64,000 bases of DNA from Parasitella parasitica NRRL 2501 (lineage: Eukaryota > Fungi > Mucoromycota), in assembly GCA_025201805.1 (NCBI GenBank), contig MU619293.1, forward strand, positions 7,613-71,612, read 5' to 3'. Within the stretch, counting starts at the first letter, position 1, and every line of letters begins with the position of its first letter. Positions 1,649-21,316 of this stretch are shown here, piece after piece. Both the position numbers and the translations under genes were made by a program. The notes below the pieces were generated by a model. It saw only the letters and a list, made by a program, of their open reading frames with translations. It made no database searches and was not told where the DNA came from.

Positions 1649-2562
1649 NNNNNNNNNNNNNNNNNNNNNNNNNNNNNNNNNNNNNNNNNNNNNNNNNNNN
1701 NNNNNNNNNNNNNNNNNNNNNNNNNNNNNNNNNNNNNNNNNNNNNNNNNNNNNNNNNNNNNNNNNNNNNNNNNNNNNNNNNNNNNNNNNNNNNNNNNNNN
1801 NNNNNNNNNNNNNNNNNNNNNNNNNNNNNNNNNNNNNNNNNNNNNNNNNNNNNNNNNNNNNNNNNNNNNNNNNNNNNNNNNNNNNNNNNNNNNNNNNNNN
1901 NNNNNNNNNNNNNNNNNNNNNNNNNNNNNNNNNNNNNNNNNNNNNNNNNNNNNNNNNNNNNNNNNNNNNNNNNNNNNNNNNNNNNNNNNNNNNNNNNNNN
2001 NNNNNNNNNNNNNNNNNNNNNNNNNNNNNNNNNNNNNNNNNNNNNNNNNNNNNNNNNNNNNNNNNNNNNNNNNNNNNNNNNNNNNNNNNNNNNNNNNNNN
2101 NNNNNNNNNNNNNNNNNNNNNNNNNNNNNNNNNNNNNNNNNNNNNNNNNNNNNNNNNNNNNNNNNNNNNNNNNNNNNNNNNNNNNNNNNNNNNNNNNNNN
2201 NNNNNNNNNNNNNNNNNNNNNNNNNNNNNNNNNNNNNNNNNNNNNNNNNNNNNNNNNNNNNNNNNNNNNNNNNNNNNNNNNNNNNNNNNNNNNNNNNNNN
2301 NNNNNNNNNNNNNNNNNNNNNNNNNNNNNNNNNNNNNNNNNNNNNNNNNNNNNNNNNNNNNNNNNNNNNNNNNNNNNNNNNNNNNNNNNNNNNNNNNNNN
2401 NNNNNNNNNNNNNNNNNNNNNNNNNNNNNNNNNNNNNNNNNNNNNNNNNNNNNNNNNNNNNNNNNTAATAAACGAGATACTTCTTTTATTGTTCGGATAC
2501 AGTTAAAAGCTGTGAATTATTACAAGTCTCTTTTTATTGTATTGAAATATTTGAAATATATA

Positions 2563-3224
2563 TCATCCAATTGATACTGTTCCAGCACATTTTTGAAATT
2601 GAGGAGACAGTCATCAAGAGTACGATGCACTAAAGGTTGATTGTTCATTTTGTGTCCCTTCCATTGGATTAATGGCAGGTTGGGAGGAACAACCAAGGTG
2701 TTGCCAGTATCACTAGCCTTGTTGTTACAAACGGAAGCAAAATCCTTGAACAAGAGATCATAATTTGCTTGACCCTCTTTCAACAGCTTCCTAAGAGTCT
2801 TACTTTTCTCTTGGAGAGCATCGTTGAGAGGATGCTGCATTGCCAATTTCGCAGCTCTGCACAGCTTAGACTGGAGCTTGGCTATCTCCTGCAAGAGCTC
2901 CTCTTGGTGCTTCTTGCTCAAGGGTTCGAAATGATCATCATCGTTGAGATCTACTTCGCTACTATCAGTCATGATACTATCGCGATCGGAAAGAGCGTCT
3001 TCGCTCAATTCCCGGTCTATTTCAGCTAATTCCTCACGCAGAGCGCTTACATCGCTCGATGCAATTTTATTAACCGTTGTCTGTCTTGGAGACAGAGCTA
3101 CTTGGGCATCAGCCACAGATCCCGTAGAGTTGGAACTCTGGCGAGATCCAACAGGACGACTTGCCATTTCAGCATAAGTGGCCTTGCTGTTGATTTCGTT
3201 GTTGTTGATGTTGTTTGAAGACAT
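2563..3224 (-). mobile_element. LTR retrotransposon gag, copy B, truncated
   Basis: Near-identical to gag copy A (4572 downward). Identity stops abruptly at ~2565, after ...EQYQLD. Confidence 0.75.
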
Positions 3225-3283
3225 TGTTATTGATTATTTGTTAAAATATTAAGAGTGTAAAAGTTTTAGGTGATTTAAAAAAG

Positions 3284-3494
3284 TGTTATGTCAAAAGTCT
3301 GATAAAATAAATCTGCCAAAGAATTACACTTTTATTCATAATACAACTCTCGATGTATTATATACACATTCATTACACTAGGGTTCTACTGTCTAGCTGC
3401 ATAATGTAAATCATGACTACCCATGATTTACTGTAAGACCCTGGGACTGATCTGAGATCCTGATGTGAGACCTTGCCATGTTATTGATATAACA
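3284..3494 (-). repeat. 211-bp LTR (copy B)
   Basis: Termini TGTTAT...ATAACA, with TATA and AATAAA on the minus strand. I count only 2 substitutions against 4632-4842. Confidence 0.85.
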
Positions 3495-4572
3495 ACCATC
3501 ATGCGAAATCTTCTGCTTCTTTAGATAGTCCGGCTTCTTACCAGCAGCCTCTGGACAAAAACGAATCATATAGCCAGCCTTGTTACAGCCAAAATACTTT
3601 CTTTGCGCCAAATCAGGACATTTAGCGCGAATATGACCACTACGTCTACAGAAATGGCAAACAGGAGGCGCACCCTTGTAATCCGCTGAGNNNNNNNNNN
3701 TCCAAGTTCCTGCAGTTGTCCAACTTGAGCTTTTTCAGGCTTGAGATAGCATCTCGCTTTTGTTGCTCGGCCGAAATATTATATTTGGCCTTCAACTTCT
3801 CAGTGAAGTTGTCCCAATTCAAATGAGGTTCGTCTTGTACAAGTTGACAAGTCCAACAACCAGCCATGCCCGTAGACATCTGGGGCTTAATCAAGCGGTA
3901 CCAGTGTGCATTCAAATCCAATTGATACTGTTCCAGCACATTTTTGAAGTTGAGGAGACAGTCATCAAGAGTACGATGCACTAAAGGTTGATTGTTCATT
4001 TTGTGTCCCTTCCATTGGATTAATGGCAGGTTGGGAGGAACAACAAAGGTGTTGCCAGTATCACTAGCCTTGTTGTTGCAAACGGAAGCAAAATCCTTGA
4101 ACAAGAGATCATAATTTGCTTGACCCTCTTTCAACAACTTCCTAAGAGTCTTACTTTTCTCTTGGAGAGCATCGTTGAGAGGATGCTGCATTGCCAATTT
4201 CGCAGCTCTACACAGCTTAGACTGGAGCTTGGCTATCTCCTGCAAGAGCTCCTCTTGGTGCTTCTTGCTCAAGGGTTCGAAATGATCATCATCGTTGAGA
4301 TCTACTTCGCTACTATCAGTCATGATAGTATCGCGATCGGAAAGAGCGTCTTCGCTCAATTCCCGGTCTATTTCAGCTAATTCCTCACGCAGAGCGTTTA
4401 CATCGCTTGATGCAATTTTATTAACCGTTGCCTGTCTTGGAGACAGAGCAACTTGGGCATTAGCCACAGATCCCGTAGAGTTGGAACTCTGGCGAGATCC
4501 AACAGGACGACTTGCCATTTCAGCATAAGTGGCCTTGTTGTTGATTTCGTTGTTGTTGATGTTTGAAGACAT
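3495..4572 (-). mobile_element. LTR retrotransposon gag, copy A, with degenerate zinc knuckles, interrupted by LTR copy B
   Basis: 308-aa ORF with a gag-like W..F...LK..Y segment. It continues past a small gap into GHIRAKCP and GCNKAGYMIRFCP (CCHC-like knuckles), then runs straight into the LTR at 3494. Confidence 0.75.
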
Positions 4573-6774: not shown

Positions 6775-8076
6775 TCAACGAAATAAGATCAAATTCATTT
6801 CACTGTCAAACTTGGCTATATTTCTGAATCGAGAGCATACTTCATTCAAACAGTTTCGGACCTTGATAAAGTCATGTCGGCTTGTCTAGGAATAAAACTT
6901 AGCGTCGTGAAACAGATTTTTGCACGAATGCTAATGTAATATACCTCTCTGATTTTATTGATGGATAATATCTCTGGAATAAAGATCGAATAAACTCCAA
7001 TTTTCTCAACTGTTTCAACAACTCTTCCGCAGTATTCAGAATATTCAGTAAAGTCCATGTTTCGAAATAACCCAGTACTTTTAATCGTTGCTAAAAATCA
7101 AACAGAAAATCATCAAGCAATTGTTGAAACTTTATATATTTGGCCTACCCATTAAATCGTTGTAATACTCTCTCTTGTTCTTCAAAGCTCTTTTAGTAAG
7201 CGGTACACGTTTGTCGGTGCGTATCAGATTGCCAAATCTATAAGCAACAAGGTTTTCCTGACATTGTCCACGAATGCTGTTGGGAGAAAAGCGCTGGAGA
7301 ATATGGAATGAAAACGTGCTTGTAGATGAGTTGCTTTTGGTCGGAATAGCGTAGCTAATGGTAAAACTCTCATTTACGATCCTCATTCTTGCATACAGCG
7401 TCTGCTTGCTTTGTTCTACGTTGTCCAAAAGACGATCCAGCTCTAATAAAAAAAAAATATATATATATAAGAATTCGTTGAATAACAAGCCAAATCAATA
7501 TAAAAACCATCAAATGCTCTTCTTGGTAGAATGCTTTGGCCAGACGGCGCATGCGGTTTGCTTCTTTTACGCAATGTAGGAGCGTCATTATGTAATGTTG
7601 GAAAAGTTGTTTCCGTAGCCATCCCAAGAGCAGGCTTTTCTTCTTGTTGCTTGACAGGATTCAACTGAACAGGTATTTCATATTGCTCGGTTTTTTTATC
7701 ATCTTGTACTAGAGAAGCAGCTTCGTCGGTAACTGTAACTGCAGGCTGAGGTTCCTGGTTATTCATGCTGTAAATTGTTACATTGCTTTGATCAGGATCA
7801 CCGTAATCACAATTTTGGATAGAGTTTCTGAACGTGTCGTTAAATATTGAACGCAAGGTATCTACAAAAGTGGTTAAAAGAGGCATGTGTGGTCTCAGAG
7901 AAAAACTCACTTCCATTTACGTGTTGACAATTTTCCAACATGTCAATAATAGTATTTTTTTCTTTACTGTCATTCCAGATTCTTGGACTTTTCTTCAATT
8001 GACACAACTGATACTGAGCGTATATGTGGAATAGCTCGTTATCAATCGGAGGATCCGCCCGCTGTTGTTTATCCAT
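6775..8076 (-). CDS. Multi-exon hypothetical protein
   Basis: ORF pieces join in phase across GT-AG introns: ...RRAFD|ELDRLL...YNDLM|ATIKSTG...NKIRE|TSRHDF...LILFR*. No family recognised. Confidence 0.55.
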
Positions 8077-8408
8077 AGTGTAGGTTATGCGAAAGATGAA
8101 GAAAAAAAAATCCGCGCGATTTATCTTTGCAGTCTTCTTTTTGAGGTTCGGTATTGGCTTTGTTACTGTCCAAACCTGTCACTTGGTTCCAACCCCAATG
8201 TTTTACCATTGGACTCTACGGTACCCATAGCAACTAGTTTATATCGAATCAGACTCTGCTTGTTCTACAAGTAGATAAAGCAATGTTCTTCCTTACTTTT
8301 AATTGGTATAATCTTTTTTTATAAATTTCAATAAAATAAACTAAATATCGTGTGTGCTTTGTCTATACAACAACGATAAGATGGCTATTTACATAACATT
8401 TGAATATT

Positions 8409-15985: not shown

Positions 15986-16848
15986 ATGTCTGATAGGTAG
16001 GATGCAATTAGAAATTCAAAACGATTTACCAACCACATCCCTCGATACTAGTAACAAAGCCGTTCCTGCACCTATATATGTATCTGAAACTCTTTTAAAA
16101 AAGAGAAAGGCCAACGAGAAGGGGGCTGCCATCAAGGCCAAGCAAAGACTTGAATTAAGAAAAGTATGAGTTGCGATTCACATAGTTTGATCTGATATTA
16201 ACCCAGGTTACATAGGAAAAAAAGAAGCTCAGAAAGACTCAATTCATGCGTGCTGACGAATACATTCGTAATCGTCGTATGATTGATAAACAGGGTAAAC
16301 GTCTTCGTTCTATATCTTCTGGTAAAAGAAAGGGTTCAAATAAGAAGGGTGATGGAAAGCTGTTATTCGTTGCTCGCATCAAAACTGAAAACAGGATTCA
16401 TCCTCAAATCAAAAAAGCTCTTGCTAAACTTCGTTTGCTAAAAATGAATGCTGGTGTGTTTGCTGTCTGCGATGATGAGACAGTCAAGGATCTTCAAAAG
16501 ATTGAGCCATATGTTACTTATGGTGTTCCTAGTTTAAAAACTGTTCGTGATCTCATTATGAAGCGTGGTGCCACTATGAGCAAAGGTGTCCGCACCCCTC
16601 TCTCTGATAATACCATAATTGAAGAAGCTCTCGGTGATTTCGGTGTCATTTGTTTGGAGGATATTATTCATGAAATTGTTCAGCACGGCGATAATTTCAA
16701 TATGGTATCAAAGTTCTTGACTCCCTTCGATTTGAATGATCCTGCCAGAGGCTGGCGTCAAAAGAAGTTGAAGGAAATAGTTGAAAGAGAGAACGACGAA
16801 GAGAATACCGAAGATGACATTAACAAATTGGTTGAGGCTATGAATTAG
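15986..16848 (+). CDS. RLP7: Ribosome biogenesis protein RLP7-like (uL30/L7 family)
   Basis: VSETLLKKRK, IEPYVTYG.P, LSDNTIIEEALG..GVICLEDIIHEI, EDDINKLVEAMN; two short 5' exons. The sequence is more divergent than a canonical RPL7. Confidence 0.8.
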
Positions 16849-17666
16849 ATTTTGGACTTTTGTATATTTTTCGCTATCATTGCACTGCTTTTTTATTTTT
16901 ATTTTCCACAACCACCAGCACTCTTCAAACTATTATCTGATTATCCTTGTCATTATTAAATTTTATAAATTGCATTATCCTTAGAAAATGCTAATAGTCT
17001 TTGAAACTGATGTGATATCCACATTTGCATTTATATACAGTGCAACCTGTAAATTTTGTCCATTTTGAAAAAACAAATGGCGTTTATTGGAATATGAACA
17101 TCCATTGGAAAAAAATAAATGGTGTTTCCTCAAAATTAAATGTCGATTTCGACAAAAATAATTGTCATATTTAAAAGCACATATTGTCGTTACCAGAACC
17201 TATAATGCATCCTCCATAAATATTTTTTGTCTTGTTTTTTTTCTACACATTTGTTTCTTTTTTAAACTAGTTTTCCGAAGACACCATATATAAATAACTA
17301 TTCCCTTCAGAAAAGTACAGATGAAGAAAATTCGGAAGGACACTTCTACTTCTTGCTCTAAAGAGGAGTCTTTAAAGAACAGAGACGGTAAAGATACATG
17401 TTAATTTCTGATCAAAACGTTACTAATTTAAGCTATGATGGTAGACACATGAAAAAATTATAACCGACAATTCAGATGATGATTTTCAGCCATCAGTAAG
17501 CTTTAGAAAAAGAAGTATGTATAAGCACATTATATTCATAAGTGTTGAAGATTCAAAGCATTTTTAAACACCCATTACATAGGTAAACAAAGCAAGAAAG
17601 AGGGCCAAAGACGAAATTGGTAGCACAAGCAAGATCAGCTTTCGCAACACCAATGCTCAAGGTCCA

Positions 17667-20073
17667 ATGATAGGTGAATCAAGCAAGACTACACAACCAG
17701 ATAGTTTCATGAATGTACCCAATGTTACTACTTCCAAATCTGACTCTACTGCTACCAAACCTGGTTCTACAACGAAAAACTTTGACGATAAAACAAGAAA
17801 AAAGGTGATGACAGTGAAAACAACTATCAAAAATATATGGAAACCGAATATTTGCAGCCATTGCATAATCTAGTGAATACTACTCATACAGTCATCACTC
17901 ACACATTTGCTTTTTCAAAATACATGTTCTTGAAAGAACTGGCCACAAACAGCAATTTCAACTTGAATGAATTTGTGCGAAAAGAATTCTTTGTGGAAGT
18001 GTTCTTGTCTCTGATTGCCCAAAATACTACCCGCAGGTCTGCTAAGCTTAAAGACACGACTGCGGAGTACAGGAAGTTCATGGCAAAATATCAACAATCT
18101 TACTTGGAAAACGCGAATTATACTCCAATCAAACTGGTGAATGCTCAACAAATAGCACTATATGAGTGCACCAAGACCCAAACTGCCTATCTTAACAACA
18201 TAAAGACCCATTTTGGAAATAGATTGCGAACTCTACTAAATAAGCTCTGTGAAAAAAAAGAAAGAGCGGAAACCATCCGTAAAGAAATGGCGTCCAATGC
18301 GTTTAGTGAAGAAGCTATTAAAGAAGCGATACGACAAAAGGCTTACAATCCCTGTGACCAAGTTATACAAGCTGTAGCTAAAAAAGGTATGCCCAACGTT
18401 GATATTTTGAATGAATCATCAAAACCAAAAGTACAAACTTTCTTGTCGGCATACCCAGAAAATTACAAGTTTAAAATGGGCTCAATCTTCTACGATGTAA
18501 AGGCTAATCCAGAAAACCACTTCAAAGCCTTCGTTAAACTTGCTGAATTGTTTGAAGCGGTGCAGCTAAAGCAATTTTTCTGTTTCCCATTAAGAACGAC
18601 GTTTATTCCTTGCTACATGACGTTAGACAACAAGATTATCCACCACCATATTATTCAAAGCAAGAAACCTTTGATGCCAAGAAGTCAACTCGAGAACTAG
18701 GGATCTATAGTCAATCTTAAAACCAAGGCTTTTAAAAATCAAGGATCCTTAAGCTTCAAAGGTACTCTTGAAACTGATGGAGTTGGTGCCAGTATCATTA
18801 AACAGAACTGCGATACCTCCCGAAAAGGGCCGCCAGTCAAGAGTGATAAGAATGTAGCCGGTGATGAAACGAGATATATTGAAGATTTAACACAAGAAGA
18901 ATTGAAGGAACTAATGGAAAATGTGTGCTCATGGATCCAGGAAGAAGAGACTTGCTATACTGCATGAAAGAAACAAGCAAAACGAGCGACAAACAAACCC
19001 TAGTGTATTCTAACGCAACTCGAAGTAAATTATCAAGACATTTCAAAATGTTGCTGAAGAAAACCAAGCCAGAAGTTATCAAAGCTGCTGAAGCCACGCT
19101 ATCGGAAACCAAATCTTCTTCTGTAAACGTAGACAACTATGTGGAATACATTAAAACAAGAGGAAACCATAAAAACTGAAAAGATGTATTACCCGGATAA
19201 ATGCTTTTTGTTGAACGTTAATGATAAGGGTGACCTGTACTTTGGGAAACTATTCGTTGCAAGAATTCGCGGTTATTATCCTCAGACTTAGAATACTTCT
19301 GGCAATCATACACGTTTCCAAATTTATGCGTCTTACATACATATAATGCTTCAGCAGCCACATATATTAGAACGTTTAAGCGATGCCGCTAAAACCGCAA
19401 TTGTCAATCTTGCGTCGGAAATGCTGAGAAATTATCGAAACGACTTGAAACAACGTGTACATGATGTTTTACAAAGTTTACAGTTATTGCCATTCAGAAA
19501 ACTCAAGTTTTCAAGCAAATTATACTACGACAAAAATGATGCGCAGTTGGTAAACAAGTTGAAAACGAAGTTTGGATCGAATTCAGTTCTGGTAATTGGA
19601 AATTGGTCTGCACCAAACGTCAAATACCATGAACCAATTAGAAACGCTGGATTGATCAAGATGCTGCAAAAGAACGGTTTTAAAGTTAATCTCATTGGCG
19701 AATACAAAACATCTTCTCTCTGCCCAGGCTGTGGTGGCAAGCTCGATCAAAAGTTTAAAACAATCCGAAACCCTAGACCATATCAACGCCACAAAATGCC
19801 CATTGTAAAGTGTCATGGCCTAACAAGGTAAAATATATATATATATATATATATGCTCACGTAACATTGAATTATGAAGACTAACCTTCTTCAAGATGTC
19901 GAAGCAGTGTGTGTTCCAGCAATGAAAACCGACTATGGAATCGAGATCTTGCAGCTGTATTAAACTTCAGAAAGATTTTAATCTCCTTGAGGGAGACAGG
20001 CAGACGACCGACAATTTTCTCAAGACAACAAAGACAAAAACTTTCCACCAAGGTTAACGCCCTGGTTATTTAA
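17667..20073 (+). pseudogene. Fanzor1 (TnpB/Cas12-like RNA-guided endonuclease), disrupted
   Basis: ETDGVGASI; RuvC-I MDPGRRDLLY (D 18934); VLVIGNWS; RuvC-II GEYKTSSLCPGC (E 19700); HGLTR|CRSSVC across intron 19828-19895; RuvC-III LWNRDLAAVLNF (D 19945); GRRPTIFSR. Frameshifts at ~17845, ~18910 and ~19165; TAG at 18698 and 19289. Further upstream exons are likely. Confidence 0.92.
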
Positions 20074-20230
20074 TGCAGGCACGTACTTTTGAATCCAAAA
20101 CGACAATAATAGATGAGCTAACAGATATTTATTCTTAGGTTAGTGACATTTGTCTATTGCCAAACGACATTCATTTTTTTACTAACAACATTTATTTTTT
20201 TAAAACTGACAAAATTAATCAGTACAACTG
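19990..20230 (+). ncRNA. Candidate Fanzor omegaRNA scaffold region (boundaries unknown)
   Basis: Position expected from Fanzor/TnpB biology (ORF 3' end to element end). Small stems at 20047-53/20060-66 and 20087-91/20096-100. Confidence 0.4.
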
Positions 20231-21316
20231 TAGTGTTAATTTTAACCTCTTATTCTGCTGAATCCTAGCTGTAAGGGCAATGTTGCCCAAAGTTCATGCC
20301 GACAATTGATTGATAAACTTGGCGTGGGCTAGCTGTTGTAGGATAGCTCAAAAACTGTTTCAATTCGTTATTCTAAACATTCTTTCACTTGATATACCCT
20401 TATTAGAAATCATGATTTTTTTTTTCCAAATAGTGATTAAAAGCTTTGAATTAGTTGGAAAGGGTTAAAACAGTGTACGATACAACGCATTTTATACTGC
20501 TTCGTAGTGATAACCCTGTGTCATAGGAAAAATAAATACAATGTAGTGTTTGGGGTTCCACATTTCGTAAGTTGTCCTGTACGAATTTATTGTTAATATC
20601 CTGCTCAAAGATATCGTAATAAAGAACATTTCCCACATTTTTCCACAATCGTCTCATTTAATTTGACCTTTGTTAATTGAATGTAGCAAAAGGAAAAGGC
20701 AGAAATTGAATTTGCATTAATAGTAGCAGCAAATATTAGATTTTGACGCACGGAGGATGCAAATTGCTTCTTCAGCAGAATAAAAGGTTTGGTCTAATTC
20801 CGAATATTATTCGAGTTCACCAGATACTGGCAAGCATAAAGATTCATTGCATCAGCAAACCCTCATGCAGTATTATCATTTTCTCATCGCCCATTTTATT
20901 ATTGCGAATGCATGGTAGTAACTTCGTGATCCGATACGCCCTTCCATACGGTTCTATAGCTCTTTTTACATTGTCAATTTAAAGTTCTGAAGAATGCTCT
21001 TTAAAAAGTTCACAGGCCAATGTAGTATCTTCAGGGCTAAGATTCTTAAATAGCCCGCGCGAAATTTTGCTACCTACACATAAAACTCACTACATCAAAT
21101 CATGGCAGATCGATGATCAGCGTACCAGCTGCAAATCCCTGCTTCTTTGGAAAAACGATGGAAGAGGCCAATTGAGCTGGTGAATCCTGAAATCCCATAT
21201 GGCTTTGAGAGATATGGTCAGGTGTAACATTACTGCAACAAAGGAATTTGTTTCATAGCAACATTACTCCTTGATTCCTTTTTTTTTTTTTTTCCATTCA
21301 CTTTTTATCAACTGAA

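What the first reader, a model, noticed from the sequence alone, without database searches (positions are those of the whole stretch)
17038..20230. Fanzor1 RNA-guided nuclease as sole cargo of a TA-flanked mariner-like TIR element
Seen: four fragmented ORFs and a hidden last exon assemble into a long protein with RuvC D(18934)-E(19700)-D(19945) and a CPGC...CxxxxC zinc finger. It is bracketed by imperfect ~80-bp TIRs starting CAGT and by TA dinucleotides, with no transposase inside. Known: Fanzors are eukaryotic TnpB descendants that are captured by diverse transposons, including in Mucorales, and cut DNA using an omegaRNA. Inference: this is a complete non-autonomous OMEGA element with both ends defined. 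This copy is dead (3 frameshifts, 2 stops), but its active site is unmutated, so a consensus could be reconstructed.
Basis: partly seen in the sequence, partly recalled or inferred. Interest (0 to 1): 0.88.

Follow-up and report, generated by a model that had tools for sequence, protein, structure and literature searches.

The report
Dead Fanzor1 gene in Tc1-like transposon
This is a broken copy of a known kind of fungal jumping gene that carries a Fanzor1 RNA-guided DNA cutter. It is ordinary as a kind, but its guide-RNA scaffold lies about 150 bases inside the element's end, so it is unclear how such elements aim at their own insertion sites.

Summary
Window 17038-20230 is a 3,193-bp element whose ends are fixed by at least 14 sibling left ends and 7 right ends in the same genome. 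Homology starts at CAGTGC (17038), stops at CAACTG (20230), and is flanked by TA.

Its only gene is a Fanzor1 pseudogene. It is colinear with residues 5-845 of the 849-aa Parasitella parasitica PpFz1 (PDB 9cf0) at about 54% identity, including the cyclophilin-binding FRI insertion. The RuvC codons D18934, E19700 and D19945 are intact.

No sibling is intact. An autonomous Tc1-type (DD34E) element with related TIRs is present in at least 5 near-identical copies and is the likely source of transposase. This is inferred.

A homologue of the published PpFz1 omegaRNA scaffold lies at 20045-20079, 151 nt inside the right end. PpFz1's own locus has the same layout. The left flank reads TATA in 13 of 14 copies, which fits PpFz1's ATN TAM. 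Intron-like signals could splice the scaffold next to the flank, but no RNA evidence was obtained here.

Verdict: a new member of a known kind.

The parts
17034..17037 (+). Left flank TATA. 17036-17037 is the TA target-site duplication. 17034-17035 is an extra conserved TA, so the flank reads as an ATA TAM-like motif.
   Evidence: TATA|CAGTGC is present in 13 of 14 sibling left ends. The right flank has TA followed by TA in 0 of 7 copies, and the autonomous family has it in 0 of 5. Fisher p = 7e-5. The published PpFz1 TAM is ATN.
17038..17170 (+). Left terminal inverted repeat. It starts CAGTGCAACCTG and carries AAATGGCG-type repeats at element positions 38 and 80.
17321..20073 (+). Fanzor1 pseudogene. 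The putative ATG is at 17321 and the N-terminal exons are uncertain. There are introns at 17515-17582 and 19828-19895. The stop codon is at 20071-20073.
   Evidence: The intron calls rest on GT..AG signals, branch-point motifs and restoration of the reading frame against PpFz1.
17591..17592 (+). Site of an 11-nt deletion (frameshift), shared with several siblings.
   Evidence: Siblings C62, C161 and C9 carry the extra 11-13 nt. Loose ends agree.
17845..17846 (+). Private 1-nt deletion (frameshift from frame 0 to frame 2).
   Evidence: 10 of 11 aligned siblings have one extra A here (C9 has three extra bases). Contigs of run X5 carry the extra A, and one X10 contig does too.
18698..18700 (+). 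Private nonsense codon TAG. Most aligned siblings read TGG (C101, C201, C10, C50).
18906..18907 (+). Private 1-nt deletion (frameshift from frame 2 to frame 1), just upstream of RuvC motif I.
18934..18936 (+). RuvC-I aspartate, in the motif MDPGRRD.
19162..19163 (+). Private 38-nt deletion (frameshift from frame 1 to frame 2).
   Evidence: Siblings C101 and C201 and contigs of runs X5 and X7 carry the 38 nt.
19160..19400 (+). FRI (Fanzor RuvC insertion) domain homologue. It includes the YPQP cyclophilin-binding loop, which here reads YPQT followed by a stop.
   Evidence: The FRI domain is described in PMC11423790.
19289..19291 (+). Private nonsense codon TAG. Siblings read AAG.
19700..19702 (+). 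RuvC-II glutamate, in the motif IGEYKTS. The zinc-ribbon CPGC follows at 19721.
   Evidence: Pfam PF07282 gives E 0.0044, below its cut-off.
19945..19947 (+). RuvC-III aspartate, in the motif WNRD.
20045..20079 (+). Homologue of the omegaRNA scaffold. SL1 pairs 20047-20053 with 20060-20066, and the conserved TTATTTAATGCAGG follows. The scaffold overlaps the stop codon.
   Evidence: It matches the published 71-nt PpFz1 omegaRNA. In the alignment, 96% of SL1 cells are paired and 3 pairs show compensatory changes.
20079..20222 (+). Intron-like tract. The donor lies right after GCAG: GCACGT in this copy and in sibling C101, GTACGT in most other siblings. One possible intron uses branch GCTAAC at 20117 and an acceptor AG at 20137-20138. 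An alternative uses branch TACTAAC at 20180 and acceptor CAG at 20220-20222. This is hypothetical.
   Evidence: Read directly from the sequence. No spliced joint was seen in the contigs of run X7.
20100..20230 (-). Right terminal inverted repeat, ending CAACTG.
20231..20232 (+). Right TA target-site duplication.

Best explanation
Window 17038-20230 is one decayed copy of a non-autonomous transposon of the Tc1/mariner superfamily in Parasitella parasitica. It has TA duplications, CAGTG termini and long TIRs with internal repeats. Its only cargo is a Fanzor1 gene of the Mucorales PpFz1 clade plus the conserved omegaRNA scaffold.

Shown: the protein homology, the intact catalytic codons, the exact ends, the TA flanks, the multiple copies at unrelated loci, and the lesions.

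Inferred:
1. The family was moved in trans by a Tc1-type DD34E transposase, like the 1,876-bp autonomous element that shares its TIR layout.
2. When intact, the protein acted like PpFz1, as an omegaRNA-guided RuvC nuclease with an ATN-type TAM.
3. The conserved TATA next to the left end is the TAM of a TnpB-style system that cuts the empty site to retain or spread the element.

This copy is non-functional.
For: Homology to the solved PpFz1 spans the whole protein, including the FRI domain.

The D, E and D codons are intact.

Sibling homology starts and stops exactly at 17038 and 20230, with TA on both sides.

Two internal deletions are each shared by several copies: element positions 996-1306 and 1806-2618. 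This shows that already-deleted copies were amplified in trans.

The autonomous element encodes a 473-aa DDE_3 plus HTH protein. It is present in at least 5 copies at about 100% identity, one of them nested in the C10 Fanzor copy. Its TIR is 78% identical to the Fanzor left end over 50 nt and has the same repeat positions, 38 and 80.

The scaffold is homologous to the published PpFz1 omegaRNA, and its SL1 covaries.

The left flank is TATA in 13 of 14 copies. The two PpFz1-family loci also have TATA there.

Fanzor1 in TA-flanked elements without a transposase is documented (PMC3627910).
Against: The Fanzor family is old: copies differ by 2.5-8.5% from their consensus. The autonomous element's copies are about 100% identical, so present-day cross-mobilisation is not shown. 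TIR identity between the two is only about 70-78%.

No empty site was found in other strains.

The scaffold ends 151 nt inside the right end, so a guide taken from the flank is not explained by the unspliced sequence.

The 24 nt after the scaffold match nothing else in the genome.
Confidence: 0.85

Rival explanations
1. The guide is made by splicing. A spliceosomal intron starts directly after the scaffold's GCAG (20079) and ends at the CAG 8 nt inside the right end (20222). It removes the TIR, so the mature RNA reads scaffold, then TACAACUG, then UA, then flank. GCAG and CUGU could then pair as a 4-bp second stem, and the flank would serve as the guide. Together with the TATA TAM, this would restore TnpB-style targeting of the empty site.
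For: Siblings have a consensus donor, GTACGT. PpFz1 has GTAAGC and L075 has GTGAGC at the same point.

TACTAAC at 20180 and CAG at 20220 are present in this copy. Five of eight copies have TACTAAC.

The layout with 150-160 nt between scaffold and right end recurs at the PpFz1 locus L073, its paralogue L074 and L071.

A short-TIR relative, L070, has only 39 nt between scaffold and end and no need for an intron.

The left-flank TAM implies a guide that reads the flank.

Other agents' notes on this genome report spliced tails in other Fanzor families. Those notes are unchecked leads, not support.
Against: No spliced joint for this family was listed in the contigs of RNA-like run X7. Contigs can hide such joints.

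The acceptor-like CAG also occurs in the reverse complement of the left TIR, so it may simply be a TIR feature.

The donor is weak in L071 (GTATTA) and L033 (GTCCAT).

The PpFz1 RNA recovered from yeast was unspliced and still active.
Confidence: 0.25
2. The guide is fixed and internal. The omegaRNA is the unspliced roughly 70-nt species, as published for PpFz1, and its guide is the element's own sequence after 20079. The nuclease would then aim at one fixed sequence, or at nothing, and not at insertion-site flanks. The left TATA would have another cause, such as an extra TA carried at the left end or a target preference.
For: The published PpFz1 omegaRNA maps entirely inside its element, 130-162 nt from the right end.

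The post-scaffold tract is conserved among siblings.
Against: No second genomic match to the 24 nt after the scaffold was found with up to 3 mismatches.

The post-scaffold tract is the part of the tail most prone to deletion among siblings.

This model does not explain a conserved TAM-like motif at the left flank in two families with unrelated TIR sequences.
Confidence: 0.35
3. The extra TA belongs to the element. The real left end would be 17036, the TSD would be 17034-17035, and the TATA would say nothing about a TAM.
For: Sequence alone cannot separate a conserved flank from a 2-nt longer left end.
Against: The repeat positions are the same (38 and 80) in the left TIR, the right TIR and the autonomous TIR when counted from CAGT. 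The same TATA|CAG occurs in the PpFz1 family. Spu-1 elements show an analogous conserved dinucleotide that forms the CATA TAM (PMC10432273).
Confidence: 0.1

Closest known systems
PpFz1 element of Parasitella parasitica (LN731931; PDB 9cf0-9cf3; Xu et al. 2024, PMC11423790)
   Same: Same species. The proteins are colinear at about 54% identity and both have the FRI insertion. The omegaRNA SL1 and the AATGCAGG motif are shared. Both elements are TA-flanked with long TIRs and a TATA left flank. In both, the scaffold lies about 150-160 nt inside the right end.
   Different: The TIR sequences differ (CAGTGCAACC here, CAGAATTTTAGTC in PpFz1). The element is 3.2 kb here and 4.2 kb there. This copy and all its siblings are broken, while PpFz1 is active in vitro.
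Spu-1 / SpuFz1 elements of Spizellomyces punctatus (Saito et al. 2023, PMC10432273)
   Same: A Fanzor1 flanked by inverted repeats, with no transposase inside. A conserved dinucleotide upstream of the left repeat forms the TAM. The omegaRNA lies at the 3' end of the gene. The protein piece 19292-19828 hits SpuFz1 at E 3e-13.
   Different: In Spu-1 the scaffold spans a 30-nt repeat and the guide is the flank. Here about 150 nt of TIR separate the scaffold from the flank.
Fanzor1-only Tc1/mariner elements such as PUl-4 (Bao and Jurka 2013, PMC3627910)
   Same: They encode only Fanzor1, carry mariner-family TIRs and have TA duplications.
   Different: They come from another host and another family. 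No omegaRNA or TAM information is given for them.
IS200/IS605 TnpB-omegaRNA systems
   Same: A RuvC nuclease with the omegaRNA overlapping the 3' end of the gene, and a TAM next to the left end. This comparison rests on established knowledge, not on a test here.
   Different: Those elements are moved by a TnpA single-strand transposase, have no TIRs and no TA duplication, and have no introns.

Membership tests
Fanzor1 (eukaryotic TnpB-like RNA-guided nuclease) | Sequence homology to experimentally validated Fanzor1 proteins | tested here: met
   Pieces hit PpFz1 with E values from 8e-101 to 8e-6 and cover residues 5-845 of 849. SpuFz1 is hit at 3e-13.
Fanzor1 (eukaryotic TnpB-like RNA-guided nuclease) | RuvC D-E-D catalytic residues | tested here: met
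   Codons at 18934, 19700 and 19945 sit in the motifs DPG, EYKTS and NRD, aligned to PpFz1.
Fanzor1 (eukaryotic TnpB-like RNA-guided nuclease) | Zinc-ribbon / TNB domain between RuvC-II and RuvC-III | tested here: inconclusive
   CPGC at 19721 and KCHG at 19808 align to PpFz1. Pfam PF07282 scores only 17.6 bits against a cut-off of 26.3.
Fanzor1 (eukaryotic TnpB-like RNA-guided nuclease) | omegaRNA scaffold at the 3' end of the gene | tested here: met
   20045-20079 is homologous to the published PpFz1 omegaRNA. The 7-bp SL1 is 96% paired, with 3 covarying pairs among 4 loci.
Fanzor1 (eukaryotic TnpB-like RNA-guided nuclease) | Open reading frame able to give an active protein | tested here: not met
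   Four frameshifting deletions and two nonsense codons. It is a pseudogene member of the family.
Fanzor1 (eukaryotic TnpB-like RNA-guided nuclease) | RNA-guided DNA cleavage | not testable with these tools
   This needs biochemistry.
Tc1/mariner superfamily, non-autonomous element | TA target-site duplication | tested here: met
   TA lies on both sides in this copy and in siblings with unrelated flanks.
Tc1/mariner superfamily, non-autonomous element | Terminal inverted repeats with Tc1-type CAGT termini | tested here: met
   The ends read CAGTGC and, in reverse complement, CAGTTG. The TIRs are 74% identical over 50 nt.
Tc1/mariner superfamily, non-autonomous element | TIRs shared with an autonomous element that encodes a DDE transposase | tested here: inconclusive
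   The 1,876-bp DD34E element has a related TIR, not an identical one: 78% over 50 nt, with the same repeat spacing.
Tc1/mariner superfamily, non-autonomous element | Empty site or excision footprint in a related genome | tested here: inconclusive
   No contig bridged 17037 to 20231 in runs X10 or X11. Run X5 has the occupied right junction.

The most novel reading that the evidence does not exclude
In long-TIR Fanzor1 elements of Mucorales, which include this family and the structurally solved PpFz1, the omegaRNA scaffold lies about 150 nt inside the right end. A spliceosomal intron would remove the TIR, so that the scaffold is joined to the flanking host DNA that serves as the guide. The conserved TATA at the left flank would be the matching TAM. 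The guide RNA would then be assembled by the host's splicing machinery.
Probability: 0.25. Interest if true: 0.8.

Novelty: new member of a known kind. Interest (0 to 1): 0.4.

Why it matters
As a kind, this is expected. Fanzor1 genes in TA-flanked Tc1/mariner shells have been known since 2013, and this genome belongs to the species that gave PpFz1.

Three things are useful here:
1. The family has exactly defined ends and a candidate partner transposase.
2. A TAM-like TATA is conserved next to the left end in two families of this species.
3. The published PpFz1 omegaRNA, like this family's scaffold, lies well inside a long TIR.

Together these make one question concrete and testable: how do eukaryotic Fanzors in long-TIR transposons obtain a guide that reads the insertion site?

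Tried and rejected
Pfam on the pieces gave only a sub-threshold PF07282 hit. The local Pfam copy lacks PF26935, which is precomputed on the homologues.

No intact sibling was found. All same-family copies carry deletions or stops.

I searched for a second genomic target of the 24 nt after the scaffold. Only the element's own copies matched.

C58 has a pair of TIR-like matches. This turned out to be a 988-bp perfect inverted repeat at a contig end with no clear transposase, and I did not pursue it.

The reads tools offered only Logan contigs. No empty site and no spliced tail were seen, and the window's private lesions could not be confirmed or refuted. At those positions the contigs of runs X5 and X7 show the sibling, unbroken states at about three times single-copy depth.

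There is no RIP-like bias among own-genome siblings: 155 G>A or C>T changes against 165 A>G or T>C.

I looked for RNA-derived contigs of relatives through protein look-ups. L075 and L076 are genomic and keep their intron.

My first guess of 65-70% identity to PpFz1 was wrong. The measured value is about 54%.

All searches were done piece by piece, by reference, and I built no consensus of the family.
Full report
**What is there**

Three-frame translation of 17200-20230 gives a chain of open pieces on the + strand. Each piece was searched separately by reference. All hit the solved Parasitella parasitica Fanzor 1 (PDB 9cf0), in colinear order:
- 17792-18697: E 8e-101
- 18701-18964: E 8e-16
- 18883-19176: E 8e-25
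- 19133-19288: E 8e-6
- 19292-19828: E 2e-50
- 19885-20070: E 8e-11

Against the 849-aa PpFz1 protein (P0152), the pieces cover residues 5-845, with 412 of 770 aligned residues identical, about 54%. The coverage includes the roughly 100-aa RuvC insertion (FRI) that binds cyclophilin in PpFz1 (PMC11423790). Siblings keep its YPQP loop. This copy reads YPQT followed by a stop.

CPGC starts at 19721. A 68-nt intron at 19828-19895 separates the zinc-ribbon exon from the NRD exon. It has a GTAAAA donor, an ACTAAC branch point and a CAAG acceptor.

**Lesions**

I compared this copy with siblings in the same genome and with contigs of other runs. This copy has:
- an 11-nt deletion near 17591, shared with several siblings
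- a private 1-nt deletion at 17845
- a private TGG-to-TAG change at 18698
- a private 1-nt deletion at 18906
- a private 38-nt deletion at 19162/3
- a private AAG-to-TAG change at 19289

That makes four frameshifts and two nonsense codons. Only contigs were on offer, so the lesions were not verified in raw reads.

**Ends**

The genome has 32.8 Mb in 450 contigs. Protein names and a matching contig length (399,066) identify it as an annotated Parasitella parasitica assembly.

It holds more than a dozen copies at 84-98% identity. Fourteen left ends start at CAGTGCAACCTG, and seven right ends stop at CAACTG. TA lies on both sides and the flanks are unrelated.

Every sibling is deleted or broken. 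Two deletions are each shared by several copies (element positions 996-1306 and 1806-2618). So already-defective copies were amplified, which means the transposase was supplied in trans.

**Partner transposase (inferred)**

The C10 sibling is interrupted by a 1,876-bp element with 177-bp perfect TIRs. This element occurs in at least 5 copies at about 100% identity. It encodes a 473-aa protein with DDE_3 and HTH domains and DD34E spacing, read from the translation.

Its TIR is 78% identical to the Fanzor element's left end over 50 nt. Both carry AAATGGCG-type repeats at positions 38 and 80, as does the right end.

So the Fanzor element belongs to a Tc1-like clade. The autonomous copies are young and the Fanzor family is old, so current cross-mobilisation is not shown.

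**omegaRNA**

Table S3 of PMC11423790 gives a 71-nt PpFz1 omegaRNA. Its first 39 nt are clearly homologous to window 20041-20079. This stretch contains a 7-bp SL1 and the motif TTATTTAATGCAGG, and it overlaps the stop codon at 20071.

Across this locus, PpFz1, its paralogue and a relative from another assembly, 96% of SL1 cells pair and three pairs show compensatory changes.

The scaffold ends 151 nt inside the right end. I fetched the PpFz1 locus itself (L073) and a paralogue (L074). Aligning them shows that PpFz1 sits in a 4.2-kb TA-flanked element with about 115-bp TIRs. Its published omegaRNA lies 130-162 nt inside that element's right end. L071 has the same layout. A short-TIR relative, L070, has only 39 nt between scaffold and end.

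**Left-flank motif**

The four bases before the left end are TATA in 13 of 14 copies. The corresponding positions after the right TA are never TA (0 of 7). The autonomous family shows no such motif (0 of 5). Fisher p is 7e-5, and the binomial p against the window's TA frequency is 3e-15.

Both PpFz1-family loci also read TATA|CAG. PpFz1's measured TAM is ATN. Spu-1 elements have an analogous conserved CA that completes the CATA TAM.

I read the TATA as a TAM kept next to the left end. This implies a guide that reads the right flank.

**The open problem**

A flank-reading guide does not fit a scaffold 151 nt from the flank. Three observations bear on this:
- Directly after GCAG, siblings have a consensus splice donor, GTACGT. 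This copy has GCACGT, PpFz1 has GTAAGC and L075 has GTGAGC.
- Downstream lie GCTAAC with an acceptor AG at 20137-20138, and TACTAAC with CAG at 20220-20222.
- Using the far acceptor would leave GCAG, then TACAACUG, then UA, then flank. GCAG and CUGU could pair as a 4-bp stem. Four base pairs is the SL2 size reported for PpFz1.

This is a hypothesis. The contigs of RNA-like run X7 listed no such joint, and the acceptor-like CAG is also a symmetric TIR feature.

After I had formed this idea, the scan's notebook showed that other agents report spliced Fanzor tails for other families in this genome. I treat those notes as leads only.

The rival reading is that the guide is internal and fixed, as in the yeast-derived PpFz1 RNA. 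It has no second genomic target here and does not explain the TATA.

**Verdict**

The finding is real and correctly interpreted, and it is a known kind. Fanzor1-only TA-flanked Tc1/mariner elements were described in 2013 (PMC3627910), and the closest relative is structurally solved. The copy is dead.

The added value is the defined ends, the candidate partner transposase, the left-flank TAM, and the evidence that the PpFz1-type scaffold is buried inside a long TIR.

Noticed in passing
L036:1868-3743 (G000 C34). Also C65, C16 and C35, and nested in C10 (L035): A 1,876-bp Tc1-like (DD34E) transposon with 177-bp perfect TIRs and a 473-aa transposase. It is present in at least 5 copies at about 100% identity, so it was probably active recently. 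One copy is inserted into a Fanzor element.
   Followed up: partly
L033 (G000 C16:42000-48500), gene at about 2400-4440: A second Fanzor1 family, 38-56% identical at protein level, with long open frames of 523-594 aa and no FRI insertion. It may be intact. Its ends were not defined.
   Followed up: partly
L073:1729-5904 (LN731931, P. parasitica CBS strain): The published PpFz1 gene sits in a 4.2-kb TA-flanked element with about 115-bp TIRs. The published 71-nt omegaRNA, including its 'native guide', maps 130-162 nt inside the right end.
   Followed up: yes
window 18390-19828: The public annotation has a 295-aa 'hypothetical protein BD408DRAFT_418170' (P0212). This model stitches pseudogene pieces together and skips the stop codons and the frameshifts. 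It is not annotated as a Fanzor.
   Followed up: partly
window 17712-18032, run X10 contigs: Sibling-like contigs in another run with the same species label differ from the window almost only by G>A and C>T changes (72 of 76). The bias looks like deamination or RIP. It is not seen among own-genome siblings.
   Followed up: partly
window 18925-18978, run X11: The loose ends of an X11 contig translate to AELKQTLGKC and RADKKEIMIF, which are identical to PpFz1. X11 and X10 flanks are only about 87-92% identical to this genome despite sharing its species label, so the strains are strongly diverged.
   Followed up: no
window 16246-16848 and 16164-16215: The upstream gene resembles a ribosomal protein. 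It is very highly represented in run X7, and a 52-nt GT..AG intron is spliced out there. This shows that X7 is RNA.
   Followed up: no
L031:386-1373 and 7102-8089 (G000 C58 end). Also DDE_3 pairs on C46, C128, C25, C66, C38, C29, C30 and C14: A 988-bp perfect inverted repeat lies at a contig end. Many Tc1-type transposase genes occur as inverted pairs 1-8 kb apart. These may be composite elements or assembly artefacts.
   Followed up: no
L035 (G000 C10), about 600 bases inside the nested element: A run of N, either withheld sequence or a gap. I did not probe it.
   Followed up: no
window 19832-19857: A (TA)n microsatellite inside the Fanzor intron. Its length varies among siblings.
   Followed up: no
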